A stretch of 64,000 nucleotides of DNA, taken from positions 8,549,150-8,613,149 of the forward strand of contig OZ037772.1 of assembly GCA_964035545.1 (NCBI GenBank). The letters are read 5' to 3'. The notes beneath the pieces were generated by a model. It was not told the DNA's origin. It was given only the letters and a program-made list of their open reading frames with translations, and did not search any database. The translations under genes and the position numbers were made by a program. The DNA is from Bugula neritina. Its lineage: Eukaryota > Animalia > Bryozoa. Position 1 is the first letter of the stretch; each line of letters opens with the position of its first letter. Below, piece after piece: positions 1 through 64,000 of the stretch.

Positions 1-2038
1 TATGCACTTTGTGATCAGTCTCCATATCATTGTTTATATTTCTAGAATGATCTCTCAGTTTATATTCATAAGTTTCTTTGTCCAGTGAATTAGCTATTAG
101 AACTTCAGAAGTGTCTCCTGTAATTAAAAATGCTATAGTAGGTATTTCACATGTAAAACAAAATTGCAAATGGTATAATGGCATTCCAGTTGGATTGACA
201 TAGTTTATTTAATGCCATTAATATATTTTAAAGTATATATATATATGCATGTATATACTTCTTCTTTTACAAGAAAAATTCATCCCTTTCAATCAGTTAC
301 CAATACACCATCATATCTAGATCAAGTAAAAGAGTTATTAAATCAACACCAACTGGAAGCAGCTACTGTAATATTAAAGGGTACAAAGTTAGCTTAATTG
401 GAACTATAAAGTTTTATATTGGTAAAGACCATTGGTTATGTCAGGAAGATCATTCAGCCATAATTTCTTTCTTTGTCACAATGGAAAGTAGGTCTTCAGC
501 TTGCTGAAAACCTTACTGTTCAGACTTTCATAGTTAAACCAGTCACTGCAATTAAATTCATTTGAAAAAATCTTTCAGTTTTTTGAACAGATTTTAGCAT
601 GTGTTAGACACATACTAACCTGATGATGTGTAGTTCCCTGCGGCATTCAACCCTAGAACTCTAAGAGTGTCAGAGATAACTTCAGACAGAGGAACATCAG
701 GTTTTTCTGGTAAGTACTTGTCATATACTGTGACTTCAACAGGAAAAGAGGTATTGTTGAGTGTATCAACCGTGGGAAGTGAAATGTAAATGAGTAAAAT
801 TGCAAACTGATTTTTAGTAAATTTCTCTTGTTGTTTTTTTAAAATCATGTGATGTCAATTTAAATCGTCAACTGCAATGAGAGAAGCGTTTGATTGTTTT
901 TGTTTTATCTGTCTAAACACACTCACCTGTTGATATGACTTCTGTTGTAGTATTCAGTCCTAGAACTTGAAAAGCCTCAGAGATAACTTCAGACAGAGGA
1001 ACATCAGGTTCTTCTGGTAGATAGTTTTGTTGTACTGCATTTTGTTTCCTGAGAAGTTCTAGTTGTTGGTTGTAACTAAAAGTATCTGAAAGTTCATTCC
1101 CAACACCATCTTCTACATCTGCTATATAAGTGCCAGATACTGTTGTTGGCATATTAAGGTAGGTTGGATTGTAATCTGTATTGTCATTAAAAATGTTAGA
1201 GTCTAAATTCACTGAATGTCTCTCAGAGTTGCTATTGGTTACTAAAAGATTCCACTGAGCACTATACTTATCTCTACAAAATGGTTCCGGTCTGTAAGGA
1301 TCACAATCTTCAAATGAATAGTTTCCACCTAAATTTCTGAAAACTCCAGAAACAACTTCAGACAAAGGATTTTCAGATTCTTTTGGTAGACAATTGTTAT
1401 ATGGTGAAGTATCCATGTTCACAAAACAGTGAGTGTTTGTATCAACTGTAGAAGCCAAAGGAACTGCACTTGCAGAAAGGCTATGACTTTGAAGAAAGTT
1501 TTCACAGAGAGCAGTGCTCTTCCATCCAACATCATTTTTAGAGATCTGATATGGCACTTGCATCTGTTTGCTTAGGGTTTGGAAAGCTGCCTGCATTTCT
1601 ATTACTGCAAAATAAAGACGGCTTTTACAAGCTTACATTAACATATCTACTCAAGACTCAAAGATTCCACAACTTCAAACGACTTCCAACACAGACACAT
1701 GCTGTTGGTCTCTCACATGCCCACTCACTCACTCACTCACTCAGCCACCACTCACTCACTTCCTTATTCATTCTCTCACTCACACCAACATACACACATT
1801 TACATATTTACACCAAAAACCCAATGAAAGTGAAATATGGACAAATTCATTTACCACCCTGCATGTTTACACCTAAATTGTACAAATTATTTTAATCAGT
1901 CATCATTTCAATGAATATCAAATAAAGAAGGCTATCACAAAATAGTAGCTTAAACTAACCAAATAATTACTTGCACAGTATTTTATACTTAGGCCTACAT
2001 GGTTTAATCACAGATATGGCAGATGATCTGAACACCAT
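1..2038 (-). CDS. ZNF unit U1, 3'-partial (finger array lies left of the window): novel N-terminal region plus start of spacer/zinc-finger exon
   Basis: ATG exon 1999-2038 (MVFRSSAISVIKP). Exon A 927-1604 is open, 678 nt, tttgcAG / G|GTGAGT. Exon B 620-778 is open but its acceptor reads CAC. The ancestral terminal-exon acceptor is mutated (CAT, 151-152), but an in-phase aattacAG at 118-119 opens DTSEVLIANSLDKETYEYKLRDHSRNINNDMETDHKVH, which matches the U5 spacer. Confidence 0.75.
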
Positions 2039-3503
2039 TAGAAGACACCTGAAAGAGAAGTAACTAGCTTTGAATATAAACAAAGTAGGACCTTCACTGT
2101 TTACTCTCAGAACAGCTAAGCAATGATTTGTACTGTATCCTATGATCATCTAGTAAAATAATGTCTAGGCTATATTTGCTTAAAACTAATTGTTGCAGTC
2201 AGCTATTGTATATTAAAAAGCTTTTGGAACAATTTGTTAGAAATATATACCCTTGCCAGTCAAGTAATAGTGTAATGCAATGTTTGCACTATTGATAAAC
2301 AATAGACTCTTTTCTAATACCTCCGGTACCCACTTTACAATTAAAATTTTTTTCTCCTACCCAAATTTTAGTTTACCAATAATGTAGAAAGCCAACACAT
2401 TAAAATTAAAGTCTGACTGCTACATGAAATCCCAACTATGCTATAGAATAGTTCTGTTAGGTGATAAAAATTTTGGTATAAGCACATATCTTAACAGTTA
2501 TGAAAACACTTTGAAAGTACTTTTTCTTGAAAAATAAAAAAAGCTTCCGTTGAGCACTTCTGTGCTCTCATTATTGAACAATGCTGAAGTGGTTATAGCT
2601 GTGATAACTATAATAAGATCCTACTAGGTGGAAGTAACTCTCATTTGTAAAATTGATTATCAGGAGTATTGCAAGCAGAGGAAGGTCAATTTTTCCTGAT
2701 AAAAAAACATCACAACCCCCATTTAGCCGTCTCAAATTATATTAAATAAAGTTTTTGAGATAAAGCTGATAAGCTTGTATATATAAATCAGTCGTTTTGC
2801 TTGTTTTAATTTTGAAGATGTATAGCACAACAAGATAATTTGTGTGCTATACTAAAATAAAAATTACAAATAATATTTCAGCACTAAAAAGCTCTTTGGG
2901 AAGAAGAGTTGCAATAGTATTCCAACTTGAAAGTATTGCTTTGTTACTTTTGATAATAAAAAATGCTGTAGATATATGTCACATGCAGAAGCGTAACTTT
3001 GCACTATCTTAATGTTTCAATTTCGAAGGTGTTGCACAAAAGTTGTATTTTGCTTTACCAAAATTAACATTAGCAAGCAAGCTATAATGTGGTTAGAAAA
3101 AGTTAGTTACAACAGTACCCCAACTTGAGAGTTATTACATATATTATGGTTTTCCCGAAAATGTAAAAAATAGTAGAGATATGTCACGGAAAATATCTTT
3201 TATAGTGAAAAAATGAGAAAGAACTGATACTAAACTATGTGAAAATATTGGCTGTAAGATAGAAGTTTTTATTAAATGAAGATGTGAATAGAACAAGATA
3301 GAGAAAATTTTGTTTTATATCTCATGTTTTCACTAAGAATACTACAACTTCAGTAACATAAAAATATTAGAGCAAGACCTAAGTACTGTACGACATAAAA
3401 CTTCAATAAACTAAAAAATACAGAGATTTTATGCCCTAGACTATATATTGTGTTATAGCAAGTATCTTAAAAAACAATTTCAATAAAAGATAAAAACAAA
3501 CTG

Positions 3504-5372
3504 TCAGCTGTAGATAGAATAAATATTACTTCTGCGCCTTGCATGTCTTGTCTTGTAGCTACATAGCGAACATTTAAAACATTTCCTCTCAATCTGCTGC
3601 TCTGTATTCTTCTCAACACCAGCCTCTTGTGTTGATCTACACTCACACACATCATAGACAGTTGTCTTCTCTTTGATCACTTTTTCTTTATGATCAAAGA
3701 GCTCTATAGATTTTTTGGCAAAGTTATACACTTCTTGATCAGTCTGAGTTTCTTTTTTATATGCACTGCTGCTTCTAATATTGCCTTAAACATGCATAAT
3801 TTTTGTTGAAAAAAAAACACATGCTTTTAATTCTGCTACCCATGTGTGCCTAATTCTTTACAGAATTTTACACAATTTTAAAAACAGTCATGATTTGATG
3901 GGGCCGGATTATTACATTCGCTTCAAAACGTGCATATCAGGTTGTTGAACATTATTTTGACATGTGTTAAACAAATACTAACCTGATGATTTGTAGTCCA
4001 CTGAAAGATTCCATCCTAAAACTTTAAAAACCGCAGAAACGGTTTCAGACAATGGATTATCAGGTTCTTCAGGTAGAGAGTGGTCATATGTTGAAGCTTC
4101 TCTAGGATGAGAGTGTTGGTTGCTTGCATCAACTGTGGGAACTGAAATATAAAGAAGTAAAATTAAAAACTAAATCTTGGCAAATCTATAATTTTTTTAT
4201 CCTTTAATATTATGTGATTTCAATTTAATTAGCAATTTCAATTAGAGAAAAACTTTGATAGCTTTAGTTTTATCCATTTAATCATACTCACCAGTTGAGA
4301 TGACTTCTGTTGTAGTATTCAGTCCTAAAACGGTGAACGCCTCAGAGATAACTGCAGAAAGCGGAACATCTGGTTGTTCTGATAGATGGTTTGCATGTAC
4401 TGCATTTTGTTTCCTGAGAAGTTCTAATTGTTGGTGGTAACTAAAAGTATCTGAAAATCCATTTTCAACACCTTTTTCTATATAAGTGTCAGATACTGTT
4501 GTTGGCAGGTCAAGGAAGGTTTGATGATCTGTATTGACATTAGAACGTTGAGAGTCTAAATTCACCGAATATATCTCAGAGCTATTATTGCATGTTACTA
4601 AAGGATCCCACTCAGCACTATACCTATCTCTACAATATGGATCCTGTCTGTAAGGATCAGGATCTTCAGATGAATAATTTCCACTTAAACTGCTAAAAGC
4701 ACCAGAAGTAACTTCAGATTCTTTTGGTAGACAGTTGTTATATGGTGAAGTATCCATGTTCATAAAACAGTCAGTGTTTGTATCAACTGTAGAAGTTATA
4801 GCAACTGAGCTTGCAGAGAAGCTATGACTTTGAACAAGGTTTTCACAGAGAGCAGGACTCTTCCACCAGACATCATTTTTAAAGATCTGATATGGCTTTT
4901 GCATCTGGTTGCTGATTGGTGTTTGAGGTATTTTATGTGGCTCTATAACTGCAAAATAAACGAAGTCTTTACAAGTTTAAATTTTAATATCTACTCAATG
5001 TCACTCAGTCCCTTCATCAATCAGTCATCCACTCCATCACTCAGTGACTCACTCAGTGACTCACTCAGTGACTCACTAAGTCACTCACTCACCCACTCAT
5101 TCACTCACTCACTCACTCACTCACCAACACCAACACCAACACCAACACCAACACCAACATATGCACACAACTTCACCCAAAAATCTCGATAAAAGTAAAA
5201 TATCCAAGATTTCATTTGCCACATAACATTTGAACACTTGAATGATAGAGATTATTTTAATCAATCAATAAATAAAGTCATCATAGAATAATAGCAAACT
5301 AACACTTTATTACTTCAACATAATGTGGGACTTACATGACGAACTCACAGGCATGGTAGATGAACCGAACAT
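3504..5372 (-). pseudogene. ZNF unit U2: intact ATG exon, exon A and exon B, but finger exon destroyed
   Basis: ATG exon 5336-5372, exon A 4292-4948 (657 nt, open) and exon B 3983-4141 (159 nt, open). The terminal-exon remnant 3504-3750 lacks its acceptor and stops after half a finger (CSLCSYKTRH), fused to 3' flank. Confidence 0.75.
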
Positions 5373-6539
5373 CACTAAGAGACAAACGAAGGAAAAGTAA
5401 CTTGCTATGTATCTAAACAATTTAAGATTTCTACTGTACTGTACCAGAAATATAAAACAATGATTTTTACTGTATCATGAAATTATCATGGTAGTCTAGC
5501 AGCATAATGTTTTAGCTTTTTTATAGTTAACCATTGCAGTAAGCTATATTGCATATTAAAAGCTGATAGAACAATGGTTCCTGCCTGTAAGGATCAGGTT
5601 CTTTTGTGCATCAAGCAACATTGTAATGCAAGTTTAGCACTGTTATTAAACAATAGACTCTTTTTCAATACCTCTGGTACCCACTTTACAAAGGATGTTT
5701 CCTCATGCCTGGAATTTAGTTCAACCATAATATAAAAAGCAAACTCACTATAAGAAACTTAGTCTGACTGCTTTACATAAAATCCCAACTATGCTATAGA
5801 ATAGTTCTTTTTATGAACTAAATATTTTGGTATATAAGCACACATCTTAAGGTAGTTTTAAAAACATTTTGAAAAATATTTGTTCTTGAAAATTTTATGA
5901 AGAAGGCTTCAAAGCACTTTAGTAGTTTTAATTATTGATCATTGCTGAATTAGAGACAGCTGTGATAACTATATATAACTAGTTATAGCAAAAGTATCCC
6001 AACTTGAGAGCAATTATGTACGGTTTTTCTGACAATGTAAAAATTGGGTAATGTACGTTTATAACAAACCATATAATTTTACTAAAATGAGAAGGAACTG
6101 ATACTAAACTGTGTAAACATATTGGCTGTTAAATAGAAGCTTTCATTAAACAATGACGTGAATTAAACAAGATAAAGAAACTTTTGTTTTATATCTCATG
6201 TTTTCACCAAGAATACTATTACTCATAAGTTACATGAAACTATTAAAATAAGACTTAAGTACTATATGCAGCATAAAATTTGAATAAACTAAAAAACACT
6301 GAGTAAATATTATGTTGGTATGTTCTAGAAAATGTTTTATATTAAATCTCTTAAAAATAATAATAAAAATGAAGACAAATTCTCAACTCTGGATACAAAA
6401 AGTATTACTTTTGCACATGTCTAGTTTTTTGTTATCATAGAAAATACAAAAAATACATGAAAATGCAAAAAAATTCCTTCCCATTTTATCTGGCATATAA
6501 AGGATAGAAGAATAGTCACTTGATTTATGGTAGAACAAA

Positions 6540-9019
6540 TTAATGTTTAGTATGTATTTTAGTGTGTGAATGAAGGTTAGATTTTTGATTGAACGATTTA
6601 TTACAAACATTACATAGAAATGGCTTCTCTCCACTATGTGTTCTCATATGTCTAGTTAGGTCACCTTTATAAGCAAATGCTTTTTTGCACACATTGCACT
6701 GATATGGCTTCTCTCTAGTGTGTGTCCTCATATGTGAAATGAGGTTGCTTTTTTGAATGAATGATTTTTTACATGCATTGCATGAAAATGGTTTCTCTCC
6801 AGTATGTGTCCTCATATGTTGCTTTAGGTTGAATTTGAGACTGAATGCATTCTTACAAATATGACATAGAAATGGCTTCTCTCCAGTATGTTTTCTCATG
6901 TGATTGTTGAGATTACCCATGTGTCTTGTCTTGTAGCTACATATTGAACATTGAAAACATTTCCTTTTGTTCTGCAGTTCTTTATCCTTCTCAAGATCAG
7001 CTCCTTGTGTTGACCTGTAGGCAGAAATGTCATGTCCAGTTGCTTTCTCTTTGAACATTTTTCTTGTCGCCCCAACAACATCCATAGGTATGTTGGTAAT
7101 GTTATGCACTTTTTCATCAGTGTAAGTATCTATATTTCTTTTTATATTTCTAGAATAATCTCTGCACTTATTTTCATTATAAGTTTCTACATCTCGTAGA
7201 TTTTTAAAAGTATAATCTTCTGTATCTGAACACGTTTGTAATTCACCTGTAAGAAAATATTGTAAATGGTATGGTAGCATTTAAAACGCATTCATAGTTA
7301 GCTTATCGGTATTAATACATCCTAATGTCTATATGTATACTTCTTTTTTTGAAAATACAAACATGCATGGATTTCAATTGGTTACCCATGGGTCACTAAT
7401 AATGAAACCATAAAATATTTAATAAATTATGGAAATCTAGAAGCAGCTAGTGAACTCTGGATAAGATCAGTACATTAGTTAAAACAAAGTCAGGGATTCG
7501 ACAATTGGTAACAGATGTTAGAAGAGCATCGAGCCATCATTGCTCCTGTGTCTCAACCAAAGACAAGTGTTTAGCTTGTTCGAAGAATTTACTATCAGAA
7601 CTTCTCATGGAGATGAAACTTTTAAAGCATTCAAAAGTTTATAAGGATCATTGATCCTGCTATAAAATGTGCTTTAAGGTTGTTAATTTTTTTTGACATG
7701 TGGTAAACAAGTACTAACTTGATAAATTGTTATCTGCAAAAAGATTCAGTCCTGGAACTTTAAAAGCTCCAAATATAACTTCAGACAAAGGAACATCAGA
7801 CTCTTCATGTGGATTGCCGTCATATGCTGTAGCATCTATGGGAATAGCGTTTCGGTTGTTTGGATGAACTTCATGATCTACTGTAAATAAATAATTTTAT
7901 AAATAATTACTTGATAGTATTATTGTTTCATTTTTTAATATCGTGTATTTTGATAAAATTTGCACTTTTAATGAGAGAGAAGATTTGATGGTTTAAGTTT
8001 GATCTATCTAATCATACTCACCAGTTGAGATGAATTCCATTGTAGTAGTCAATCCTAAAACTTGAAAAGCCTCAGAGATAACTTTAGACAGAAGAGCTTC
8101 AGGTTCCTTTAATGGTAGATAGTTTTCTTGTACTGCATTTTGTTTTCTGAGAAGTTCTAACTGTTGGTGGTATCTAAAGTTGTCTGCAAATCCATTTTCT
8201 ACACCTTCTTCTACATATTTGTTAGACACTGTTGTTAGCATATTAAGGAAAGTTTGATTGTCTGTATTGACATTAGAACTTTGAAAGTCTAAAACCACTG
8301 AATGTCTCTCAGAGCTGTTATTGGTTACTAAAGGATCCCACTCAGCACTATACTCATCTCTACAATATGGTTCCTGTCTATAAAGATCACAATCTTCAGA
8401 TGAATCCATTCTACTTAAACTGCTAAAAGCACCAGAAGTAACTTCAGACAGAGGAACATCAAATTCTTTTGGTAGACAATTGTTATGTAGTGAAGTATCC
8501 ACGTGCTGTGACTTTGAACAAAGTTTTCACAGAGAGCAGGACTATTCCACCAGACATCAATTTCAAAGATCTGATATGGCTCTTGCATCTGTTTGCTTAG
8601 TGTTTGAAGAGCTGTCTGTGGTTCCATTACTGCAAAATAAAGGCAGCCTTAACAAACTTACATTAAAACATCTACTCAAAACTTAGGAATTCCTATACAT
8701 GGTGTGTGTGTTTTTTTTTAAATTGTGCACAATTTAAAGAAAACACACACACACACTCACTCATTCACTCATTCACTCACTCATGAACTCACTCACCCCA
8801 GCATACACACATTTACACAGTAATTAAGATCAAAAACCCAATAACAGTGAAATATGCACAAATTCATTTACCACCTAGCATGTTTACACCTAAGTTATAC
8901 AAATTATTTTAATCAATCATCTTGTTAATAAATAGTAAATAAAGAAGGCTATCATGAAATAGTAGCTTAAACTAACCAATTAATTATTTCCACATTGTTT
9001 CATACTTACATGGTTTCAT
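6540..9019 (-). CDS. ZNF unit U3: 5 C2H2 fingers; exon A frameshifted, exon B and finger exon open
   Basis: Finger exon 6540-7246 (cttacAG|GT). Exon B 7719-7880 is 162 nt and open. Exon A 8022-8629 is 608 nt after a deletion near 8502 and is split over ORFs 8415-8627 and 8008-8502. ATG exon 9010-9019 (MKP). Confidence 0.7.
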
Positions 9020-9784
9020 CACAGACAATCTGAACACTTCCAGAGAACACTGGAAAGAGAACTAATTAGTTCTGAATATAAAAACTGTGAGACATTCACT
9101 GTAAACTATGAGGCTAAGGTTAAACAATGATTTGTACTGTATCATATGGTTATGTAACAGCATAATGTCTTGGCTATATTTGTTTATAATTAATCATCGC
9201 AGCTAGCTATTACACATTGGAAAGCTGATGAAACAATGTGTTAGACCTGTACCTTTGTCCATGAAGAACTAGTGGTATACATTTTGTGCATGGTTAACAA
9301 AATATTCAAAAATGATGGCCAAGTATTTTTGATAAAAAAACATCATAACACCAATCTGCTGTTTCAAATTAAATTGAATAAATAGTTGAGATAAAACTGA
9401 TAGGTTGGTAAATAAAGTTAATTATTCTGACCAAAATTTTAGTTATTTCAATTTTGAAAATATAGCACAATAACTTACATTTTGCACTATCCCAAAATGA
9501 GCATTAGAAGCATTATTAACTCATTGAAAAGTAGAGGTGCAATAGCACTAGCAATTGCGATTGATTGTAGGGTTATTTCTGATGTCTTCAAAACGCTGTT
9601 AATAATTTGGTGATGGGTATAAATGACTTAAATAATAATGGCACAGATAAAGATTGGAAAAGTGGCAGTTTGAATATTGGAGTTTGGGGTTAGGGGTTTT
9701 AAGTTAGGGCTTTGTGTTTTGGGCTATATAGGGTTTTGATTTTGAGCTATAGGGGGTTTGGGCTTTGAGGTATTGGGGGTTTAA

Positions 9785-10797
9785 AACTCCTAAAGCCTCA
9801 GAAATAACTTCAGAAAGAAGAACATCAGTTTCTTTTAGTAGACAGCTGTCAAACACTGAAGCGTTTGTGTTAACATGGTCTTGAGGATTTGTATCAACTG
9901 TAGAAGTCAAAGGAACTGTGTCTACAAAAAAGCTAGGACTTTGAGTAAAGGTCTCACAGAAAGCAGTAGTTGTCCACTGAACATCATTTTTAGATATCTG
10001 ATGAGACTCTCGCATCTGGTTGCTGATTGGTGCTTGATATATTTTATGTGGTTCTATAACTGCAAAATAACAAAAGCCTTTACAAGTTTAAGTTAAAATA
10101 TCAACTTAACTTTCACTCACTCAATCCATCACTCAGTCACACAGTCACTCACTCATTCGCTCACTCACTCACTCGCTCACTCACTCGCTCACTCACTCGC
10201 TCACTCACTCGCTCACTCACTCGCTCACTCACTCGCTCACTCACTCGCTCACTCACTCGCTCACTCACTCGCTCACTCACTCGCTCACTCAGTCGCTCAC
10301 TCACTCGCTCACTCACTCGCTCACTCACTCGCTCACTCGCCTGCCCGTTCGCTTGTCCAAAAACCGCCCGCCCGCCCACTCGCTCACTCACTTACTCACT
10401 CACTTAATCACTCACTCAATCTCTCACTCAAACCAAAATACTCGCACTTTTGAACAATAATTTACCCATGCAAAAGCTCAATGGAAGTGAAATATCCGAG
10501 ACTTCAATTGCCACACAATAATTTGCATCTAAATTATACAGTTTATTTTAATCAATCAGCTTTTTAATTAGTAATGTAGTGACGAGTTTACCCAGTGACC
10601 CCTGTGGTGAAATTGGCCAGTGCCTGCTTGCAAGCTATAATTCTGTGGTTCGATTTTTGATGGGAGAAATTATTTTACAAATACTAAATACAAGAGGCCA
10701 ACATAAAATATTAATAACACATTAACCAATTTATTAGTTCTAAAGAACAAGTATACTTACATGGCTGAATCACAGACATGGTGGAAGAACTGACCAT
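9785..10797 (-). pseudogene. ZNF unit U4: truncated, only the ATG exon and 5' part of exon A remain
   Basis: ATG exon 10761-10797 (MVSSSTMSVIQP). Exon A runs from 10059 to ~9785 (…DVLLSEVISEALGVL), then abuts a GGGTTT-rich repeat. No exon B or finger exon. Confidence 0.8.
10140..10430. repeat. (ACTCGCTCACTC)n microsatellite in U4 intron 1
   Basis: Direct reading; source of the spurious SERV-repeat ORF. Confidence 0.95.
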
Positions 10798-12003: not shown

Positions 12004-14814
12004 CTAATTCTTAGAATGTCTTTTAGCATGTGACTGAAGGGCCTGCTTACGAGTAAATGACTTATTACACACATTGCATGCAAATGGCTTCTCTCCAGTG
12101 TGTGTCCTCATATGTACAATTAGACCACCTTGTTGAGCAAATGATTTCTTACACAAACTGCATGCAAATGGTTTTTCTCCAGTATGTGTCCTCATATGTT
12201 GCTGTAGATTGTATTTGAGACTGAATGCACTATTACAAATATGACATAAAAATGGTTTCTCTCCAGTGTGTGTTCTCATATGACGTTGCAGGGTAATTCT
12301 TTGACTAAATCCACTCTTACAAAAAGGACATGTAAATGGTTTCTCTCCAGTGTGAGTCCTCATGTGTCGCCTTAATGTAGTCTTATGATTGAATGCACTT
12401 TTACAAATATGACATGCAAATGGTTTCTCCCCAGTGTGTGTCCTCATATGTTGCTGTAGGGTACATCTTTGACTGAATGCACTTTTACAAATATGACATA
12501 AAAACGGTTTCTCACCAGTGTGTGTCCTCATATGGTTGATGAGCACATCTTTCCAGGTAAAAGCAGACCCGCATATTTCACATATAAATGACTTTTTCCC
12601 AGTATGTATTCTCATGTGCTGGTTGAGATGACTCTTGCGTTTTGCCTTGTAGCTACATTGTGAACATTGAAAACAGTTTCTTGCACCATTCTTTTCTGTA
12701 TTCTTCTTCAAATCAGCTCCTTGTGTCAACCCATACTCACAAACATCTTGTATAGTTGCATTCTCTTTGATCACTCCTTTCGTCTGCCCAACAACATCCA
12801 TAGATATGTTTGTAATGTTATGCACTTTGTGATCAGCCTCCATATTTTTGTTTATATTTCTTGAATGGTCTCTCAGTTTATATTCATGAGTTTCTTTGTA
12901 TAGAACATCTGGTAGATTTTCAGAAGTATCTCCTGAATGAAAACACAATTGTATTTTACCTGTAAAACAATATTATAAACAGTAAATTACAAATGGTATG
13001 ATTGCATTCAATTTTCATTCATAGTTTATTTAACGTTACTAATACATTCAAATACATATACTTGTACTTTTTAAAAAAAAAACATGAATCCAATTCAATC
13101 AGCTACCAATATGCCATCAATGATGAAAGCACAATTAGCTAGATCAATTAAACGAGTTATTTAATCAACTACTTTTGAAAGCAGCTAGTGCACTACTGGA
13201 GAAGATGATGCTAGCTTAATGAGAACTATAAAGTCATGGTGTTAATTATTGGTAAAAGTCATTTTTGGTGTTAGGGGGAACATTCAGCCACAATTTTTTG
13301 TTTGGCACAATAGAAAATATGTTGTCAGCCTACTGAAAAACTTTACCTTTCAGGCTTTTACAGTTAAACCATGCAGTCACCAGTTAAATTCAATTCAAAT
13401 TAATCTTTCAGGTTGCTGAACAGATTTTAACATGTGTTAGACATATATTTACTTGATGATTTGCAGTCCCCTGTTGCATTCAACCCTAAAACTTTAAGAG
13501 TGTCAGAGATAATTTCATACAGAGGAACATCTGATTTTTCTGATAGGTACTTGTCATATACTGTGGCTTCCACAGGAAAAGAGGCATTGTTGAATGTATC
13601 GACCGTGGGAACTGAAATGTAAATGAGTAAAGTTGTAAACTGAATTTTAGCAAAATAAATTTCTTTTGTTGTTTCTTCAATAACATGTGATGTTAATTTA
13701 AATCATCAATTGCAGTGAAAGAGACATTTGATGGTTTTCATTTTGTCTATCTAAACACACTTACCTGTTGAGATGACTTCTGTTGTAGTATTCAGTCCTA
13801 AAACTTGGAAAGCCTCAGAGATAACTTCAGACAGAGAAACATCAGTTTCTTCTGGTAGATAGTTTTCTTGTACTGTATTTTGTTTCCTGAGAAGTTCTAG
13901 TTGTTGGTTGTAACTAAAAGTATCTGAAGATCCACTCTTAACATTATCTTCTACGTAAATATCAAATGCTGCTGTTGGAACGTTAAAGAAAGTGTGATTG
14001 TCTGTATTGACATTAAAACTTTGAGAGTCTAAAATCACAGAATATCTGACAGAAGTGAAATTGGTTACTAAAGAATCCGACTCAGGACTATACCCATCTC
14101 TACAATATGGATCCTGTCTGTAAGTATCACAATTTTCAGATGAAGAATTTCTACTTAAAATGCTAAAAGCTTCAGGAATAACTTCAGACAGAGGAACATC
14201 AGGTTCTTCTGGTAGACAGTTATTATGATTGTATATTGAAGTATCCATGTTCACATAACAGGGAAGGTTTGTATCAACTGTAGACGTCATAGCAACTGAG
14301 CTTACAGAGAAGCCATCACTTTGAACACAGTCTTCACAGAGAGCAGGATTCTTCCACCCGACATAATTTTTAGAGATCTGATATGGTTCTTGCATCTGTT
14401 TGCTTGGTGTTTGGAGAGCTGCCTGTGGTTCTATTACTGTAAAATAAAAACAGCCTTTATGAGTTTACATTAAAATATCTATTCAAGACTCAAGAATTCC
14501 TATACCCGATGATTTCAAACACAGTTGTGCTCAAACAATCACACACTCAAGCACACATGCACTTACTCATTTACTCACTCACTCACTCACTCACTCACTC
14601 ACTCACACCAACATACACATATTTGCACAATAATACCAAAAAGCCAATGAAAATAAAATATGCACAAATTCATTTACTGGCACCCAGCATGTTTACACTT
14701 AAGTTATACAATTGATTTTAATCAATCTTCTTTAAATGAATAATAGATAAAGAAGGCCATCATAATTAGTTCCATATAAATTATTTTATACTTACATGGT
14801 TTAATCACGGACAT
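12004..14814 (-). CDS. ZNF unit U5: complete 4-exon gene, novel N-terminal region plus 8 C2H2 fingers
   Basis: Exons 14796-14814, 13765-14436 (672 nt), 13453-13611 (159 nt) and 12004-12959. All GT-AG, all phase 1, open throughout. Eight CxxC…HxxxH fingers with TGEKP-type linkers. Confidence 0.88.
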
Positions 14815-15858
14815 GGCAGATGATCTGAACACCACTGGAAAAAACTGAAAAGAGAACTAACTAGTTTTAAACATAAAAACTGTGATCCTTTCCCTGTAAA
14901 CTATGAGACTAAAGTTAAACAATGACTTGTATTGTATATGGTTATTTAATCAGCCTAATTTTTTGGCTATGTTTGTTTATAATAATTAATCATTGCAGCT
15001 ATAGCTATTGTATATTGGAAAGCTGATGGAACAATGTGTAAGACCAGCACCTTTGTTTATGAAGAAATAGTGTTATACATTTTTAGCATGTTTAATCAAA
15101 TATTCAAAAAGGATGGTCAGTTATATCTGATAAAGAGCATCATAACAATAGTCAGCTGTCTCAAATTATATTAAATAAATTGTTGAGATAAAACTGATAA
15201 GTTGGCATATATAGAGTCGTTTTGCCATCTGACCAAAGTTTTAGTTGGTTTAATTTTGAAGATATAGCACAACAAGATAAGCTGTGCACTTTCCCAGAAT
15301 AAGTATTAAAAATATTATCTAACTAACTCATCCGAAAGTAGAGCTGCAATAGCATTTTAACTTGAGATTAATTGTGTAGTTATTTCTGATGTTATCAAAA
15401 AGCTGTAGATAAAAACGAACATAAAATTTGGTGTTGGGTATAAATGGCTTAGGTGATAATGGCACAGGTAATGATTGGAAAAGTGGCAGTGTGAATATTT
15501 GAGTTTGGGCTTTGTGTTTTGGGCTATAGGGGGTTTTAGATTTGAGTTATAGGAGGTTTGTGCTTTTGGGGGTTTGGGGGAGAATGGAAGGAGGGTTTGA
15601 AAATGGAGCATCAATGTCCAATCCTTGTATGCCAACTTTTTCTGAGTATGCTATACGGCATAAAACTTTAATAAACTAGAAAATACTAAAATATTATGTT
15701 GTAGACATATATGTTTTATATTGGATCTCATAAAAAAATGTTTTAATAAAAGATAAAGGAAAACTGTCAACTGCAGATAAAAACAATATTGCTTCTGTAC
15801 AGGTCAAGGTTTTTGTTGCTATATAGAAATGTACATGAACATTAAAGAGGTTTCCTTC

Positions 15859-26846: not shown

Positions 26847-28086
26847 GGCAGATGAACTGAATATAACTGAGAGGCATTGAAAGGAAAAGTAACTTGTTCT
26901 GATTAGATATTCACTATCAGGGTAATCTAACAGCATAATGATCATGGCTATTTACCTCTAGTTAATTCCTAAAGAGCTACTATAGGCTATTGTATGTGAA
27001 TAAAGCTATAATGGAACCATGTGTTAGAACTACACCTTTGACAATCAAATAATATTGCTATATGCACTATTTGCTTGTGTAAAGAAAGACTCATGAGGGA
27101 AATTTAATTTGGCATGACGAAAAATATAATCAATAGTTTTAAAGTATACCAAGTAAACTCATCAAGATAAAACCCGATATGCTGATTCAAATGATTATTT
27201 TATCTAGCTACAACCTTGTTATATGCCCTAGTTCAAAAGGTACATTATATATAGTAAGGTATAACTTTGTTAGGGCACTAAACTTTAGAACAATTATTTA
27301 ACCATAAATCTATTTCAATAAAGTAAAGTTGGAATATAATATTTTAACTTGAGAGTTATTATATGGTTTAATTTCTATTTCACAAAAACTAATGTTGCAG
27401 TAGGACAAAACTGTGTAAACACATTGGCTGTGAAATATAACAGCAATTTTAATTGACCAAGATAAAAAGTTTTGGTTTACAATTCAAACAGTCTATAATC
27501 TTACTAACATAAAACATCAAAATTATTCTTATAAGTACTATGGCATAAAACTTTGATTAACTAAAAAAAGCTCAGATAAGAAATATTTTATTATTATAAG
27601 ATCTTCTAAAAAGAGTATATAAGAAAACTAAGAAAAATTGTCAACTTAGATATACTAATACAATTATAGATATTGATTATATGAGCATGTCTAAGTTCAT
27701 TTTCTACTTTTCTTGTAATAACATAACTTACAATTATAATACTCATATTGGATTTAAAAAGGCAGATATCTAAACCCCTTAACTAGTCATCAGACATACT
27801 ATCTATAACATATGTATGTAATTTACATGTTCATGAAAATATGAAATCGTTTTCTTCCTATTTTATCTGCCAATTATAATTTAAAATAATTTGAAACTAA
27901 TAATAAGCTAATTTTTCTACGTGAATAGCTACTTCTTTTTTCACAAGGAAAGTTAACAGAAAGTTTCAGACAGCTGATTTGCACTCACTAAAATTATAGA
28001 AGAACATATTAATAATTTCTAGTATGCATTTTAGTGTGATTTAGAAGACTTGGTTTTTGAGTAAATAATTTCTTACACACATCGCA

Positions 28087-30185
28087 TTAGAATGGCTTCT
28101 CTTCAGTGTGAGTTCTCATATGTACACGAAGACTCCATTTTTGAGTGAATGATTTATTACAGACATTGCATGAAAATGGTTTCTCTCCAGTATGTGTCTT
28201 CAAATGTCGCTGTAGGGTGCATCTGGTACGAAATGCATTTTTACAAATATGACATGAAAATGGTTTCTCTTTAGTATGTGTCCTGAGATGTTGTTGCAGG
28301 GTAAACCTTTGACTAAATGCACTTGTACAAATATGACATGGAAATGGCTTTTCTCTGGTGTGTGTTCTTATATGTTTAATAAGAGCATCTTTCCAGGTAA
28401 AAGCAGACCCGCATATTTCACATATAAATGGCTTCTCTCCAGTATGTATTCTCATGTGTCTGTTGAGATAACACTTGTATCTTGCCTTGTAGCTACACTG
28501 AGAACATTGAAAACGTTTCTTTTTGCTCTGCTGCTCTTTGTTCTTCTCAACACCAGCTTCTTGTGTTGACTCATTCTCACAAATATTATGTAAAGTTGTC
28601 TTCTCTTTGATCACTTTTCTTTTCTGACTAATAGCATCTGGAGATTTGTTGGTAGTGTTATTCACTTTTGGAACAGCCTGAGTTTGTATATCTCTGTTTA
28701 TTTCTCTAGAACAGTTTCTCCACTTATATTCATGTGCTTTTTTGTACACTAGATCTGGTAGCTTCTCAGAAGTGTCTCCTTTGTTTAAAGGCGCTTGTAT
28801 TTCACCTGTAAAAAACAGTACTAATGATATTATGTTGACATTCAAAGTTCATTCATAGTTTATTTAAATTTATTATTAAATTCTAACACTTTCTTTTGAA
28901 AAACATGCAAGCATTTCAATCATTTTTATCTAATCATACTCACGACTTGAGATGACTTCTGTTGTAGTATTTAGTCCTAAAACTGTGAAGGTCGTAGATA
29001 TAAATTCAGACAGAGGGACATCATTTTCTTCTGGTAGATAGCTGTCATGTACTGAACTTTGTTTCCTGAGAAATTCTATTTGTTGGTGGTAACTAAAAGT
29101 ATCTAAAACTTCATTTTCTACACCTTCTCCTATGTAAGTGTTGGGTACTGCTGTTAGCATATTAAGGAAAGTTTGATTGTCTGTATTGGTATTAAAACTT
29201 TGAGAGTCTAAATTCACTGAATGTCTTAAAGAGGTGTTATTGGTTACTAAAGGATTCCACTCATCACTATATTTATCTTTACAATATGAATCCTGTCTGT
29301 AAGGATCAAGATCTTTGAATGAATAATCTTCAGATAAAACTCCAAAAGCCTCAGAAATAACTTCAGATAAAGGAACATCAGGTTCTTCTGGTAGGCAGCT
29401 GTTATACACTGAAGTTTCTATGTTTGCATAGCCTCGAGTGTTTTTATCAACTGTGGAAGTCAGAGGAACTGAGTTTAGAGAAAAGTTATTACATGGAATA
29501 AAGGTCTCGCAGAGAGCAGGAATTGTCCACTCAACATCTTTTTTAGATATCTGAAGAGGTTCTTGCATTTGGTTGCTTGGTGTTTGAGATAGTTTACGTG
29601 GTTCTAAATCTGCAAAATAAATTAGAAAGCCTTTACCAGTTTACATTGAGATATTTACTCGAAGTTCACTCTCTCACTCCTTCTTTTACTCACTCACTCA
29701 CTCCTTTCTTCACTCACTCACTCACTCACTCCTTCTTTTACTCACTCACTCAGTCTTTCCTTTACTCACTCACTGACTCACTCACTCACTCACTCACTCA
29801 CTCATTCACTCACTCACTCATTCAAACCAACCTACACACATTCCCTCAATAATACCCAATAAGCTCAATTAGAGCAAAATACCCAAGGGTTGATTTGCTA
29901 CACAAAATGTTTACACCCAAGTTATACAGATTATTTTTATTCATTATCTTATTAATAAAATATATCATAGTAATTAGTTGACCTAGTGGCCCTGTGGTGT
30001 AATTGGCTAGCAGGCCTGCTTGCAAACTGGAGGTCTGTGGTTCGAATCCTGATGCGGGAAAGTGTTTTACAATTGATGCATAAATAAAGCCACCACAAAA
30101 TAATGGCAAACCAAACAACTAATAGTTTCCATAGTATATTATACTTACATGGTTGAGCCAGAGACATGGCAGATGAACTGAACAT
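28087..30185 (-). CDS. ZNF unit U9: 3-exon gene (exon B cleanly deleted), 5 fingers (sixth behind a TAA)
   Basis: ATG exon 30149-30185 (MFSSSAMSLAQP), exon A 28944-29609 (666 nt), a 138-nt hybrid intron, then finger exon 28087-28805. Confidence 0.85.
29988..30058 (+). repeat. tRNA-like (second SINE head or tRNA pseudogene) insert in intron 1 of U9; relatives at ~10607-10667 (U4), ~18500-18572 (U6) and ~26666-26738 (U8)
   Basis: A-box TGGTGTAATTGG, loop CTTGCAA and B-box GGTTCGAATCC. The acceptor and anticodon stems do not pair well, so it is not called a functional tRNA. Confidence 0.65.
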
Positions 30186-31044: not shown

Positions 31045-33710
31045 TCAAGTGTGTGTCCTCATATGTGAAATAAGGTGGTTCTTTTGAGAAAATGATGTAT
31101 TGCACACATTGCATGTATATGGCTTCTCTCCCATGTGTTTTCTCATATGTCTAGTTAGGGTGCCGCTTCGAGAAAATGACTTTTTACAAACATTGCATAG
31201 AAATGGCTTCTCTCCCGTGTGTGTTCTCATATGTCTAGTTAGGGTGCCGCTTCGAGAAAATGACTTTTTACAAACATTACATTGATATGGTTTCTCTCCC
31301 GTGTGTGTTCTCATATGTCTGGTTAGGGTGCCGCTTAGAGAAAATGACTTTTTACAAACATCACATTGATATGGTTTCTCTCCAGTGTGTGTCCTCATGT
31401 GTTGCTTTAGGATATCACTGGTAGAGAATTTCTTTATACAAATGTGACATGAAAATGGTTTTTCTCCCGTGTGTGTTCTAAAGTGCCGAGTAAGATGTTG
31501 CATATTTTTTGTCTTATAGTTACACTGAGGACATTTCTTTATACCCTGCTGTTCTTCATTCTTCTCAACACCAGCATCTTGTGTTGACTCATACTCACAA
31601 ACATCATGTAAAGTTGTCTTCTCTTTGATCACTTCTTCTTTCTGATTGAGGACATCTGTAGGCTGGTTGGCCATCTTATACACTATTTGATCAGTTTGAG
31701 TCACTATACTCCTGTTTATTTCTTTAGAATAGTCATTGCACTTATATTCATAAGTTTCTTTGTACAGTGTATTTGGTAAAATTTCAGAATATAAATGATC
31801 TTGGATTTCCCCTGTAAAACAGTATTACAAATGATATAATAGCATTGAGTTTTCATTCATAGTTTTTTTAATGAATTAATGATACATCCTAATGTATAAA
31901 TTATGTATTCTTCTTTTTTTGAGAAAACATGGATCCAATTCAATCAGTTACTAATATGCCACCAATGATGGAAGCACAACTAGCTATATAATATATCAAT
32001 TTAAAGAGTTATTAAATCAACTACTATTGAAAGCAGTTATTGCACTACTGGAGGATATGATGCTAGCTTAATTAGAACTATAAAATCATGACATTCATTA
32101 TTGGTAAAGGCCATATTGGTGTTATGAAGAGCATTTGGCCATAATTTTTCTTTTGCCGCAATAGCAAAAATGTTCTCAGCCTGCTGAAAACCTTTACCAT
32201 TCAGGCTTTTACAGTTAAACCAGTCACCAGTTAAACTGGTTTTTAAATTCTTTTTCAGCATTTTGAACAGATTTTAACATGTGCTAAACACATACTAACC
32301 CGATGATATGTAGTCCGCTAAGGCATTCAACCCTAAAACTTTTAAACTGTCAGAGATAGCTTCAGACAGAGGGGCACCAGGTTTTTCTGGTAGGTACTTG
32401 TCATACACTGTGGCTTCTATGAAGAAAGAGGTTGTATGCATCAACCAGAGGTTAACTGAATCGTAAATGAGTATAGTTGTAAAATGATACTTGGCTAATT
32501 TATTTTGTTGTTTAATCCTTGATATCATGTGATATCATTTCAATTAGTGATTGCAATGAATGAAACATTTAATGGTTTTCGCTTTATTTATCTAATCAGT
32601 ATACTCACCAGTTGAAATGACTTCCGGTACAGTATTCTGTCCAAAAACTTTAAAAGTCTGATCAGACATAACTTCAGATGTAGTAAAATCAAGTTTTTCT
32701 TGCATATAGTTTTCACGTACTGCACTTTGTTTCCTGGGACGTTCCAAATGTGGGCGGTTGCTCAAAAAATCTGAGAATTCATTCTCTACACCATCTTCGA
32801 CATAAGTGTCAGACACTGTTGTTGGCATTTCAAGGAAAGTTTGATTGTCTGTATTGACATTAAAACTTTGAGAGTCTAAAATCACCGAATGTCTCTCAGA
32901 GCTGTTAATGGTTACTAAAGGATCCCACTCAGCACTATATTTGTCTCTACAATATGAATCCTGTCTGTAAGGATCAGGATCTTCGGGTAAATAATATCCA
33001 CTTGAACTGCTATAAGCTTCTGGCAACATAGGAATATCAGATTCTTGTGATAGACAGTTGTCATATGCCGCAGTTTCTGTGTCAACATTGTCTTGAGTGT
33101 TTGTATCAACTGTAGAAATTAAAGGAGCTGAGTTTATAAAAAACCTATGAGAAGTTTGAGTAAAGTTTTCAGAAAAAGCTCTTGTATATGTTCACTCAGC
33201 ACACACTCGCACACACTAGCACACACTAGCACACACTAGCACACACCCGCACACACCCGCACACACCCGCACACACCCGCACACACCCGCACACACCCGC
33301 ACACACCCGCACACACCCGCACACACCCGCACACACCCGCACACACCCGCACACACCCGCACACACCCGCACACACTCGCAAACACTCGCACACACTCGC
33401 ACACACTCGCACACACTCGCACACACTCGCACACACTCGCACACACTCGCACACACTCGCACACACTCGCACACACTCGCACACACTCGCACAGGCACAC
33501 AATGGTAATGAAAGTTCCAATGACACAGTAAGATCCACATGAGAGTGCAATTGCTAAAAAATTTTGTACACTTATACAGTATAAATTTACTTTTTTTCTC
33601 AATCATTCGTTAGAAACAGATAGATATGAAAACCATTGAATAGTACCAATTAGCCAACAATTTTTTAATGTTTACAAAAATTTATACTTACATGGCTGGC
33701 CCCCAGACAT
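31045..33710 (-). CDS. ZNF unit U10: 6 fingers including three near-identical tandem fingers; 5'-shortened exon A
   Basis: ATG exon 33692-33710 (MSGGQP). Exon A is probably 32609-33109 via a cryptic in-phase acceptor. Exon B 32300-32455 (156 nt, open). Finger exon 31045-31811. Confidence 0.72.
33199..33493. repeat. 10-bp satellite (GCACACACTC / GCACACACCC)n in U10
   Basis: About 29 units in homogeneous blocks of variants. Confidence 0.95.
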
Positions 33711-35523: not shown

Positions 35524-38500
35524 CTATGGTAGACCAGACTGATTCTTAGTGAGTATTTTAGTGAGAGACAGAAGGCTAGCTTTACTAGTGAATGACTTCT
35601 TACACACATGGCATAGAAATTGCTTCTCTTCACTATGTGCTCTCATATGTCTGGTTAGAGAACTTTTTTGAGTAAATAATTTTTTGCACACATGGCATGA
35701 ATATGGCTTCTCTCTAGTGTGTGTCCTCATATGTAACATAAGGTTACCCTTTTGAGTGAATGATTTATTACACACACTGCATGAAAATGGTTTTTCTCCA
35801 GTATGTGTCCTCATATGTTCCTGCAGGGTAGTTCTGTGTTTAAATGCACTTTTACAAATATGACATGCAAATGGTTTCTCTCCAGTGTGTGCTCTCATGT
35901 GTCTGGTTAGAGAATCTTTTTGAGCGAATGATTTGTTACACACATGACATAGAAATGGCTTCTCTCCAGTGTGTGTCCTGACATGTTTCTGCAGGGTACC
36001 TCTTTGGCTGAACGCACTCTTACAAATATGACATACAAATGGTTTCTCTCCTGTGTGTATTCGCATGTGACAGATAAGAGCATTTTTCCAGGCAAAAGCA
36101 GACCCACATATTTCACATATAAATGGCTTCTCTCCAGTATGTATTCTCATGTGCCTGTTGAGATGACTCATGTGTCTAGTCTTGAAGCTACATATTGAAC
36201 ATTGAAAACATTTCCTTTTGTTCTGCTCTTCTGTATTCTTCTCAAGACCAGCTTCTTGTGTCAACTCATACTCAGAAACATCATGTAAAGTTGTCTTCTC
36301 TTTGATCACTTCTTCTTTCTGATTGAGGACATCTGTAGGCTGGTTGGCCATCTTATACACTATTTGATCAGTTTGAGTCACTACACTCCTGTTTATTTCT
36401 TTAGAATAGTCATTGCAATTATATTCATAAGTTTCTTTGTACAGTGTATCTGGATGAATTTCAGAATATAAATGATCTTCAATTTCCCCTGTAAAACAGT
36501 ATTACAAAAGATATAATAGCATTGAGTTTTCATTTATAGTGTGTTTATTGTTATTATTACATCCTAATGTATAAATTATGCATTCTTTTTCTTTTGAGAA
36601 AACATGGATCCAATTCAATCAGTTACTAATATGCCACCAATGATGAAAGCACAACCAGCTATAATATATCAATTTAAAGAGTTATTAAATCAACTACTAT
36701 TGAAGCAGTTATTGCACTACTGGAGGATATGATGCTAGCTTAATTAGAACTATAAAATCATGACATACATTATTGGTAAAGGCCATATTGGTGTTAGGAG
36801 AAGCATTCAGCCATAATTTTTCCTTTGCCACAATAGAAAATATGTTCTCAGCTTTCTGAAAACTTTACCATTCACGCTTTTAGAGTTAAACCAGTCACCA
36901 GTTAAACTGGTTTTTAAATTATTTTTCAGCATTTTGAACAGATTTTAACACGTGTTAAACACATACTAACCCGATGATATGTAGTCCGCTATGGCATTCA
37001 ACCCTAAAACTTTTAAACTGTCAGAGATAACTTCAGACAGAGGGGCACCAGGTTCTTCTGGTAGGTACTTGTCGTACACTGTGGCTTCTATGAAGAAAGG
37101 GGTATATGGTTCTATGCATCAACCATGGGAACTGAATCGTGAATGAGTATAGTTGTAAACTGATACTTGGCTAATTTATTTTATTGTTTAATCCTTAATA
37201 TTATGTGATATCATTTCAATTAGTAATTGCAGTGAATGAAACATTTGATGGTTTTTGCTTTATTTATCTAATCAGTATACTCACCAGTTGAAATGACTTC
37301 CGGTACAGTATTCTGTCCTAAAACTTTAAAAGTCCGATTAGACATAACTTCAGATGTAGGAAAATCAAGTTTTTCTTGCAGATAGTTTTCTTGTACTGCA
37401 CTTTGTTTCCTGGGATGTTCCAAATGTGGGCGGTTGCTCAAAAGATCTGAGAATTCATTCTCTACACCTTCTTGGACATAAGTGTCAGACACTGTTGTTT
37501 GCATTTCACGGAAAGTTTGATTGTCTGTATTGACATTAAAACTTTGAGAGTCTAAATTCACCGAATGTCTCTCAGAGCTGTTGTTGGTTACTAAAGGATC
37601 CCACTCAGCATTATACTCATCTCTACAATATGGATCCTGTCTGTAAGGATCAGGATCTTCGGGTAAATAATTTCCACTTGAACTGCTAAAAGCTTCTGGC
37701 AACATAGGAATATCAGATTCTTGTGATAGACAGTTGTCATATGCCGCAGTTTCTGTGTTAAAGGATTGCTCTATCTTAGTTTATTACAATCACATTATAA
37801 TTATAAACTATAATCTAATGTGTATGCAAACAATTGTGACTTTGCAAAGGGATATATGCCTAGAAAACAGCTTTTCAAAATTCCAATTTTGAGGGAGGTA
37901 AAATTTTCAGCCATGAAAAAGAATAGCCTAATACGTGACGTGTGAACGCCAGTAACTATGCTGCACGTGCTAACTATAACGCTAGTATTCAAGGTTGCTG
38001 GGCACAACATCAACCAATTACGCTCAAGCAGTTACAGTGCGCTATATAGGTCAGCTTTGGTGTGCCCGTAATATTGCACGATCTGACTTAGTTTAGATCG
38101 ATCGCAAGCATTCATCCTAAAGAATGCATGCTTTTGCAAGGCTTTTTTCTAATGTTTACAAGCAAAATATAGCCTAATGTTTTCACATACATGTTATTTA
38201 AAATGTCAAAAAACTATAGATTGAGATAATTCACATTTGCACTTCTATAAATATACAAATTGCAAGCTAAAAGATTACATCTCACAGTCATATTTCTATA
38301 GTTATTCATTTGTATAGTCACGTGACCAGCAGGAATGCTGGCGCTGTTACGTCACACTTCCCAGCTCATTTCAAAATCGGCGTTTTGGCTGTTACCAATC
38401 TACACCCTCAACTTCAACTAACTTTTTCTACCTTTGGTCAAATGCTTTTTGTCAATGCATGCTTAGAAAAACACAATATTATATGTGTTTGACCTAAATG

Positions 38501-39003
38501 GCCATTTATTAGACAAGATAGAGCAATCCTTTAACATTGTCTTGAGTGTTTGTTTCAACTGTAGAAATTAAAGGAGCTGAGTTTACAGAAAACCTACGAG
38601 GAGCTTGAGTAAAATTCTCAGAGAGAGCTCTTGTATATGTTCACTCAGCACACACACTCGCACACACTCGCACACACTCGCACACACTCGCACACACTCG
38701 CACACACTCGCACACACTCGCACACACTCGCACACACTCGCACACACTCGCACACACTCGCACACACTCGCACACACTCGCACAGGCACACAATGGTAAT
38801 GAAAGTTCCAATGACACAGTAAGATCCACATTAGAGTGCAATTGCTAAAAAATTTTGTACACTTATACAGTATAAATTTACTTTTTTTATCAATATCATT
38901 CTTTAGAAACAGATAGATATGAAAACCATTAAATAGTACCAATTAGCCAACAATTTTTTAATGTTTGTAAAACTTTATACTTACATGGCTGGCCCCCAGA
39001 CAT
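35524..39003 (-). CDS. ZNF unit U11: 7 intact plus 1 degenerate finger; exon A interrupted by a transposon, exon B broken
   Basis: ATG exon 38985-39003. Exon A (donor side at 37285) is split by insertion 37762-38530. Exon B 36971-37131 is 161 nt with an in-frame TAG. Finger exon 35524-36488 is open with an intact acceptor. Confidence 0.65.
37762..38530. mobile_element. Non-autonomous DNA transposon with TTAA target duplication (Kolobok-type termini)
   Basis: Perfect 16-bp TIR AGGATTGCTCTATCTT…AAGATAGAGCAATCCT with TTAA at 37758-37761 and 38531-38534. The empty site is visible in paralogs U4, U8 and U10. AGG…CCT ends fit Kolobok better than piggyBac (CC…GG). Confidence 0.85.
38648..38784. repeat. 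10-bp satellite (GCACACACTC)n in U11
   Basis: Paralogous to 33199-33493, shorter and with a single variant. Confidence 0.95.

Positions 39004-57425: not shown

Positions 57426-64000
<6,575 letters not shown>

What the first reader, a model, noticed from the sequence alone, without database searches (positions are those of the whole stretch)
1..39003. Lineage-specific KRAB-ZNF-like cluster with an unrecognised N-terminal effector region
Seen: 11 same-strand paralogs with ATG exon / exon A / exon B / single spacer+finger exon, variable finger number and birth-and-death decay. The ~280-aa acidic N-terminal region matches no ZNF-associated domain I recognise (KRAB, SCAN, ZAD, BTB, SET, FiNZ). It keeps conserved blocks: ISKxDVxWxxxALCE, DPYRQDxYCRDxYSAEWDPLV, FSYxQQLELLRKQ and the repeat described in the next finding. 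Established: tetrapod KRAB-ZNF genes have the same layout (A-box exon, optional B-box exon, one finger exon), sit in tandem clusters and repress transposons. Inference: this is an independently evolved effector+ZNF family, possibly for transposon recognition or silencing, in an invertebrate.
Basis: partly seen in the sequence, partly recalled or inferred. Interest (0 to 1): 0.88.

Follow-up and report, generated by a model that had tools for sequence, protein, structure and literature searches.

The report
Bryozoan zinc-finger family, drifting acidic leader
This is a real, fast-turning-over family of about 70 zinc-finger genes private to the moss animal Bugula, but its 'unknown effector region' evolves almost freely instead of being a conserved KRAB-like domain, and the only family-wide conserved piece is a 60-base stretch that seems to be kept as DNA or RNA at least as much as for the peptide it encodes.

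Summary
In detail: 11 minus-strand units (19-nt ATG exon, exon A, optional exon B, finger exon; all phase 1), 5 with open frames. A Bugula contig shows the predicted splicing. The window lies in a 28-unit cluster of a roughly 70-locus family on several contigs, found only in Bugula. The scan had already noted sister clusters (s1-444301; probably s1-457081). The model has no fold (pLDDT 42). The named blocks are not family-wide. Fingers behave like those of KRAB-ZNFs: contact residues change three times faster than the backbone, and finger exons swap between units. Only the repeat is family-wide. Its 60-nt core is 89-98% identical between subfamilies whose upstream DNA no longer aligns, with silent sites slowed threefold; 37 of 38 single-repeat genes keep a 26-mer within three mismatches. 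That points to a nucleotide-level element or ectopic conversion, with at most mild peptide constraint (0.6-0.8). The HP1 PxVxL reading fails. Nothing links the family to transposon silencing.

The parts
1..2017 (-). U1: ATG exon 1999-2017 (ATG mutated to ATA), exon A 927-1604, exon B 620-778 (acceptor lost), finger exon from about 117 running off the window
3552..5354 (-). U2: ATG exon 5336-5354, exon A 4292-4948, exon B 3983-4141, spacer remnant 3552-3770 without fingers; broken
6540..9028 (-). U3: exon A 8022-8629 with a frameshifting deletion near 8505, exon B 7719-7880, finger exon 6540-7246 (5 fingers); broken
9781..10779 (-). U4: ATG exon 10761-10779 and exon A fragment ending at the first repeat; broken
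12004..14814 (-). U5: open gene, exons 14796-14814, 13765-14436, 13453-13611, 12004-12959; 601 aa, 8 fingers
15859..18654 (-). U6: open if the decayed exon B is skipped; exons 18636-18654, 17518-18177, 15859-16718; 3 intact fingers plus degenerate ones
20360..22928 (-). U7: open gene, exons 22910-22928, 21875-22540, 21568-21717, 20360-21051; 508 aa, 5 fingers
24058..26846 (-). U8: all four exons present, frameshifts in exons A and B, exon-A donor and exon-B acceptor lost; broken
28024..30167 (-). U9: open gene without exon B, exons 30149-30167, 28944-29609, finger exon from 28805; stop after finger 5, a sixth finger beyond it
31045..33710 (-). U10: open gene using an internal exon-A acceptor and an internal exon-B acceptor; exons 33692-33710, 32609-33109, 32300-32416, 31045-31811; 6 fingers
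   Evidence: same acceptors used in the spliced Bugula contig L031
35524..39003 (-). U11: exons 38985-39003, 37285-38558 (interrupted), 36971-37087, 35524-36488 (7 fingers); broken
37756..38536 (.). non-autonomous DNA transposon in U11 exon A, 22-nt perfect terminal inverted repeat including a TTAA duplication
967..1026 (-). near-consensus copy (59/60) of the family-wide 60-nt core (U1 repeat 2); 26 copies at 40/60 or better lie in the window, up to three per unit
21915..21974 (-). near-consensus copy (59/60) of the core in open unit U7 (repeat 2)

Best explanation
A Bugula-restricted tandem C2H2 transcription-factor family evolving by unequal crossing-over and exon swapping. Shown: the finger array is the selected part (backbone conserved, contact residues varied), so paralogs most likely bind different DNA sites. 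Shown: the N-terminal exons must stay in frame and stay acidic, but their amino-acid sequence drifts close to the neutral rate and has no predicted fold. Inferred: the leader works as a low-constraint acidic disordered region, most simply an activation-type or cofactor-contact region in which composition and a few aromatic residues matter, with one short helix (the repeat) under at most mild peptide constraint. Shown: the repeat is conserved family-wide mainly at the nucleotide level, silent sites included. Inferred: the 60-90-nt stretch is a cis-acting element near the end of the long exon (splice enhancer, protein-binding or small-RNA site) and/or a tract kept alike by ectopic exchange. In this cluster it was triplicated by partial duplication of the ancestral exon end and now also serves as a recombination substrate.
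For: Exon A dN/dS 0.97 (F1x4), 0.92 (F61), 0.83 (F3x4); 0.7 rejected under F1x4 (2dL 16.6); open-frame subset 0.90; exon B 0.90; spacer 0.97-0.98; finger backbone without ligands 0.38-0.39, 2dL over 250. Exon A diverges about as fast as introns in sister pairs. Neutral simulation leaves 0.25 of 21 exons stop-free against 21 of 21 in the alignment, which was chosen for open frames. Net charge -21 against -11 +/- 2.6 expected; aromatic columns 0.74 against 1.02 +/- 0.12. AF2 pLDDT 41.6, two short helices. Contact pN 0.22-0.25 against backbone 0.07-0.08, p 2e-10. Exon-A and spacer trees reject each other, AU p below 1e-60. Core 89-98% identical across C1, C4 and three C8 clusters, while upstream DNA of one subfamily finds no BLASTN match in the others. 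Silent rate in the motif one third of upstream, 2dL 10.5-11.1. Fourfold sites differ at 0.13 in the motif, 0.26 upstream, 0.26-0.52 in best-matched fingers. Variants in 37 genes: 5 silent and 12 replacement events over 8 and 18 sites.
Against: Activation is inferred from composition only; AD-like tiles (a rule recalled from memory) occur in 3 of 5 open units. Repeat dN/dS depends on the codon model: 0.81 (not significant) or 0.61 (2dL 10.9), so peptide selection is not excluded. The silent-rate test rests on four distant sequences, and misalignment upstream would inflate the contrast. Within the window's cluster the repeat is not slower than the rest of exon A. The 26-mer was chosen as the best-conserved stretch. 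Recombination makes any single tree approximate.
Confidence: 0.55

Rival explanations
1. KRAB/FiNZ analogue: the short acidic repeat (about 30 residues, core E-P-D-V-P-L-S-E-V-I-S-E-A-F) is a co-repressor docking helix, and the fingers target transposons. The rest of the leader is linker.
For: The repeat is the only family-wide protein motif, is predicted helical, is acidic and close in size to FiNZ (28 aa, PMC10547256), and has dN/dS 0.61 under F3x4, with D, S, E, S positions at 0.27-0.43. Contact residues diversify (1.3-1.4).
Against: Silent sites are slowed as much as replacement sites. Radical changes (E to K, P to S, V to N) are as common per site as silent ones. The hydrophobic face is not clearly constrained (V, L, V, I, F at 0.58-0.86). 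Open unit U10 has no consensus copy. No data on targets or repression.
Confidence: 0.2
2. The 60-nt island has no function of its own: it is kept alike by repeated short ectopic gene conversion among about 100 genomic copies, and the whole leader is a near-neutral translated linker.
For: dN/dS near 1 in every reading frame of the core. The same derived alleles recur in several subfamilies, including a two-site variant shared by C4 and this cluster. Sharp 5' edge of similarity between U1 repeat 2 and distant members (1.00 and 0.93 inside, 0.57 just upstream). Mosaic divergence within the cluster and repeat-to-repeat deletions (L028).
Against: The cluster with the most copies (three per gene, tandem) is the least homogenised. 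The island is also visible within subfamilies, where conversion could use the whole exon (83-91% upstream against about 97% in the 26-mer). Exchange between contigs through 60-90 nt with unalignable flanks should be rare (general knowledge).
Confidence: 0.2
3. The repeat recruits HP1 directly through a PxVxL pentapeptide (P-D-V-P-L), bypassing a TRIM28-like adaptor.
For: 21 of 60 repeat copies fit PxVxL exactly; it lies in a disordered region.
Against: The proline position is free (dN/dS 1.31). The flanks break the published HP1a rules: acidic at -3 and -1, acidic instead of basic at +4, no basic residues where 3-6 are expected (PMC12526061).
Confidence: 0.05

Closest known systems
Tetrapod KRAB-zinc-finger genes (KZFPs)
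   Same: Tandem clusters, N-terminal region on separate exons, one exon holding spacer and finger array, birth-and-death turnover, recombination between paralogs, fast change at contact residues (PMC5363842).
   Different: No KRAB match. KRAB is highly conserved and binds TRIM28 (PMC5363842, PMC8835667), whereas this leader drifts at dN/dS 0.83-0.97 and has no predicted fold. No evidence of repression or transposon binding.
Cyprinid FiNZ-ZNF genes (PMC10547256)
   Same: Lineage-private family with a short acidic N-terminal motif on its own exon upstream of a finger exon; no similarity to known domains.
   Different: FiNZ is described as highly conserved as a peptide, in about 700 genes, with knock-down evidence for transposon repression. 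Here there are about 70 loci, the motif sits at the end of a long drifting exon, is triplicated in this cluster, and is conserved at silent sites too.
Family-wide cis-elements in ZNF coding exons (ZNF274/SETDB1 at 3' ends of KZFP genes, cited in PMC5363842) and exonic splice enhancers near exon ends (PMC4054783, PMC4868121, abstracts only)
   Same: A shared nucleotide sequence inside coding exons of a gene family, with slowed silent sites; the core holds a GAAGAA run and ends about 45-50 nt before the donor in repeats 2 and 3.
   Different: It lies in the N-terminal exon, not in the finger array; it is longer and more strictly kept than a typical splice enhancer (own knowledge); no factor or RNA partner was identified.

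Membership tests
KRAB-ZNF | KRAB-A domain (PF01352) N-terminal to the fingers | tested here: not met
   No KRAB hit at E up to 1 for five exon-A translations, exon B or distant members. Genome-wide PF01352 search blank but without a positive control.
KRAB-ZNF | Tandem TGEKP-linked C2H2 array in one exon, clustered genes | tested here: met
KRAB-ZNF | N-terminal domain under strong purifying selection | tested here: not met
   dN/dS 0.83-0.97 for exon A, 0.90 for exon B
KRAB-ZNF | Positive selection at DNA-contact residues | tested here: inconclusive
   ML 1.30-1.38 (2dL 5.9-9.2), but pairwise pN/pS 1.1-1.4, p 0.06; recombination can inflate it. Clearly faster than backbone.
KRAB-ZNF | TRIM28 binding, repression, transposon targeting | not testable with these tools
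   needs tethering, IP-MS and ChIP or DAP-seq
FiNZ-ZNF | 28-aa FiNZ sequence, cyprinid distribution | tested here: not met
   All credible homologs come from Bugula samples; FiNZ is unique to cyprinids (PMC10547256). No FiNZ profile was available for a direct comparison.
ZAD-, SCAN-, BTB-, SET-ZNF | Respective Pfam domain in the leader | tested here: not met
HP1-binding PxVxL/HAC motif | Hydrophobic-x-V-x-aliphatic core with basic flanks and no acid at -3, -1 | tested here: not met
   core fits in part of the copies, flanks do not
Structured RNA element | Stable, covarying secondary structure or Rfam match | tested here: not met
   z-scores -0.8 to +1.2, covariation term 0.02, no Rfam hit
Dual-coding exon | dN/dS below 1 in another frame | tested here: not met
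   0.86-1.30 in the five other frames

The most novel reading that the evidence does not exclude
The family carries a shared 60-90-nt cis-regulatory element inside its N-terminal coding exon (a binding site for a family-wide regulator, a small-RNA target or an exon-definition element) that co-ordinates about 70 zinc-finger genes on several contigs; the apparent 'effector motif' would then be largely the translation of a nucleic-acid element.
Probability: 0.3. Interest if true: 0.65.

Novelty: new member of a known kind. Interest (0 to 1): 0.4.

Why it matters
Lineage-private tandem ZNF families are a recurring feature of animal genomes (PMC10547256), and none appears to be described for bryozoans. 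This one is a useful counter-example to the assumption that such families come with a conserved KRAB-like effector: the specificity module evolves like that of KZFPs while the leader drifts. It also shows that a protein motif shared across paralogs can be misread, because silent sites are as conserved as coding ones. If the element is functional it gives a short, directly testable handle on how a ZNF family is regulated or spliced as a group.

Tried and rejected
U5 sequence from that stretch had gone to Pfam before it and to the genome search in the same turn; afterwards U5 exon A went into. Spliced models were built only inside scripts; the joined search was left out and exons were searched one at a time. 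Rejected: KRAB, SCAN, ZAD, BTB, SET homology; PxVxL/HP1; RNA structure; overlapping frame; codon bias as the cause of silent conservation, since the rare Leu codon CTG is the one kept; an antisense or source locus of the 26-mer outside the clusters (all 76 matches lie in them); positive selection in exon A from site models, which cannot be told apart from rate variation and recombination. P0008 and P0009 were set aside as probable low-complexity matches to profile positions 12-36; their sequences were not read. No fold search was run because the model is low-confidence.

Full report
Observation. A six-frame scan finds nine C2H2 arrays or array remnants on the minus strand between 1 and 36.2 kb, and exon-wise BLAST finds eleven units. 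Each unit has a 19-nt ATG exon, exon A (500-680 nt), an optional exon B (117-162 nt) and one exon with a roughly 100-aa spacer and the fingers; every junction is phase 1. U5, U6, U7, U9 and U10 read open from ATG through 3-8 fingers. The other six are broken by a lost start, frameshifts, truncation or a transposon.

Organism and family size. The window is C8:8549150-8613149 of a 216-Mb assembly. One homolog is KAF6037386.1 of Bugula neritina. The other credible hits among 1.84 billion cluster representatives come from Logan runs SRR4020081-85 and JGI samples labelled AY690838; I take these for B. neritina samples from memory and from the shared proteins, not from a record. A second profile search added no named source outside Bugula. 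Other bryozoans may simply be unannotated. In the own genome the family has about 28 units at C8:8.44-8.59 Mb and about 40 more at C1:26.74-26.78, C8:4.61-4.65, C8:10.72-10.78, C4:16.55-16.65 and single loci on C3, C4 and C7. Finger arrays lie 1-2 kb downstream on the same strand where sampled. Distant members have one 150-170-aa exon ending in a single repeat, and two of them show the same 19-nt ATG exon. In this cluster the end of that exon was partly duplicated, giving up to three repeats.

Transcription. Contig L031 (SRR4020085) lacks two introns that lie between GT and AG in the 99-100% identical contig L035, and it joins the ATG exon, exon A and exon B at the predicted donors and at internal acceptors. 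A family member is therefore spliced in Bugula. It is a fused, finger-less variant, not one of these units.

Selection on the leader. A codon model whose likelihood matches IQ-TREE gives dN/dS 0.97 over 21 exon-A copies; F3x4 and F61 give 0.83 and 0.92, and the open-frame subset 0.90. The N-terminal lead, the DPYRQ block, the QQLELLRKQ block and repeats 1 and 2 give 0.78-1.31 with a free rate, none different from 1. Simulation shows 93% power at a true 0.5 for a repeat-sized block. Exon B gives 0.90 and the spacer 0.97-0.98, while finger backbones give 0.38. Sister pairs diverge about equally in exon A and in introns. What is kept is the frame, the net negative charge and, weakly, aromatic positions (one of eight classes, uncorrected). 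AlphaFold finds no fold, only two short low-confidence helices (shallow alignment).

Fingers. Contact positions change about three times faster than the backbone (p 2e-10) and at or slightly above the silent rate. Exon-A and spacer trees are incompatible; U5 and U7, for example, differ by 9% in exon A and 31% in the spacer. This is the KZFP-like part of the picture (PMC5363842, PMC10547256).

The repeat. It is the only family-wide motif. Its 60-nt core is 89-98% identical among clusters on C1, C4 and C8. By contrast, the upstream 300 nt of a C1-type member finds only C1, and that of a C8:10.7-type member finds neither C1, C4:16.6 nor this cluster. A 26-mer occurs at 76 places within three mismatches, 25 exactly, all in these clusters, with none for the reversed control. 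37 of the 38 single-repeat genes I could count keep it, at a mean distance of 2.5%. In four distant members pS is 0.19 against 0.46 upstream and pN 0.13 against 0.34. A separate silent rate is required (2dL 10.5-11.1) and a separate dN/dS is not. Variants split 5 silent to 12 replacement over 8 and 18 sites. Over 60 copies dN/dS is 0.81 or 0.61 by codon model, so mild peptide constraint remains possible. RNA structure, an overlapping frame and codon bias do not explain the pattern. A nucleotide-level function and ectopic conversion both fit. The triplicated cluster being the least homogeneous, and the island being visible within subfamilies, lean towards function relaxed by redundancy; recurrent shared alleles lean towards conversion. 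The PxVxL reading, which I noted and which note s1-445982 also raises, fails on conservation and on the HP1a flank rules.

Verdict. A new lineage-private member of a known kind of system. It works like a KZFP family in how its fingers diversify; it is not one, and no conserved effector domain or transposon link is shown. Sister clusters were already reported in this scan. Interest 0.4.

Noticed in passing
window 37756-38536: Non-autonomous DNA transposon with a perfect 22-nt inverted repeat including TTAA; TTAA target with purine-purine termini recalls Kolobok elements (from memory).
   Followed up: partly
window 45649-47431: Tc1/mariner copy with 29-nt inverted repeats including TA and a broken transposase (HTH at 46039-46362).
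   Followed up: partly
window 57400-64000, minus strand: Multi-exon WD40 gene, WDR47-like by recollection; Pfam WD40 hit at 58505-58810.
   Followed up: no
window 54322-54795, plus strand: Fibrinogen C-terminal domain exon (PF00147, E 1e-10).
   Followed up: no
L035 and L031 (Logan SRR4020083, SRR4020085): A fused unit in another Bugula sample: exons A and B of a U10-like gene splice to a cryptic acceptor inside exon A of a U3-like gene whose finger exon is deleted, giving a transcribed leader-only gene with four repeats.
   Followed up: partly
G000 C5:14.55-14.72 Mb: A further large C2H2 cluster with long arrays that has no match to this family's leader or core.
   Followed up: no
first intron of most units, e.g. 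window 14560-14606, 33193-33493, 38651-38784: A CACT/CACG microsatellite in intron 1; its expansion in U10 and U11 coincides with loss of the first part of exon A and use of an internal acceptor.
   Followed up: partly
window 15480-15600 and 9700-9790: A C/A-rich segment from the spacer between units follows directly on repeat 1 in truncated U4, marking a deletion junction.
   Followed up: no
window 41857-42208: 74-nt inverted repeat, 99% complementary, 204 nt apart; probably a small MITE.
   Followed up: no
L041:5521-7338: A Mutator-family transposase gene 1.2 kb downstream of a family member in a Bugula contig.
   Followed up: no
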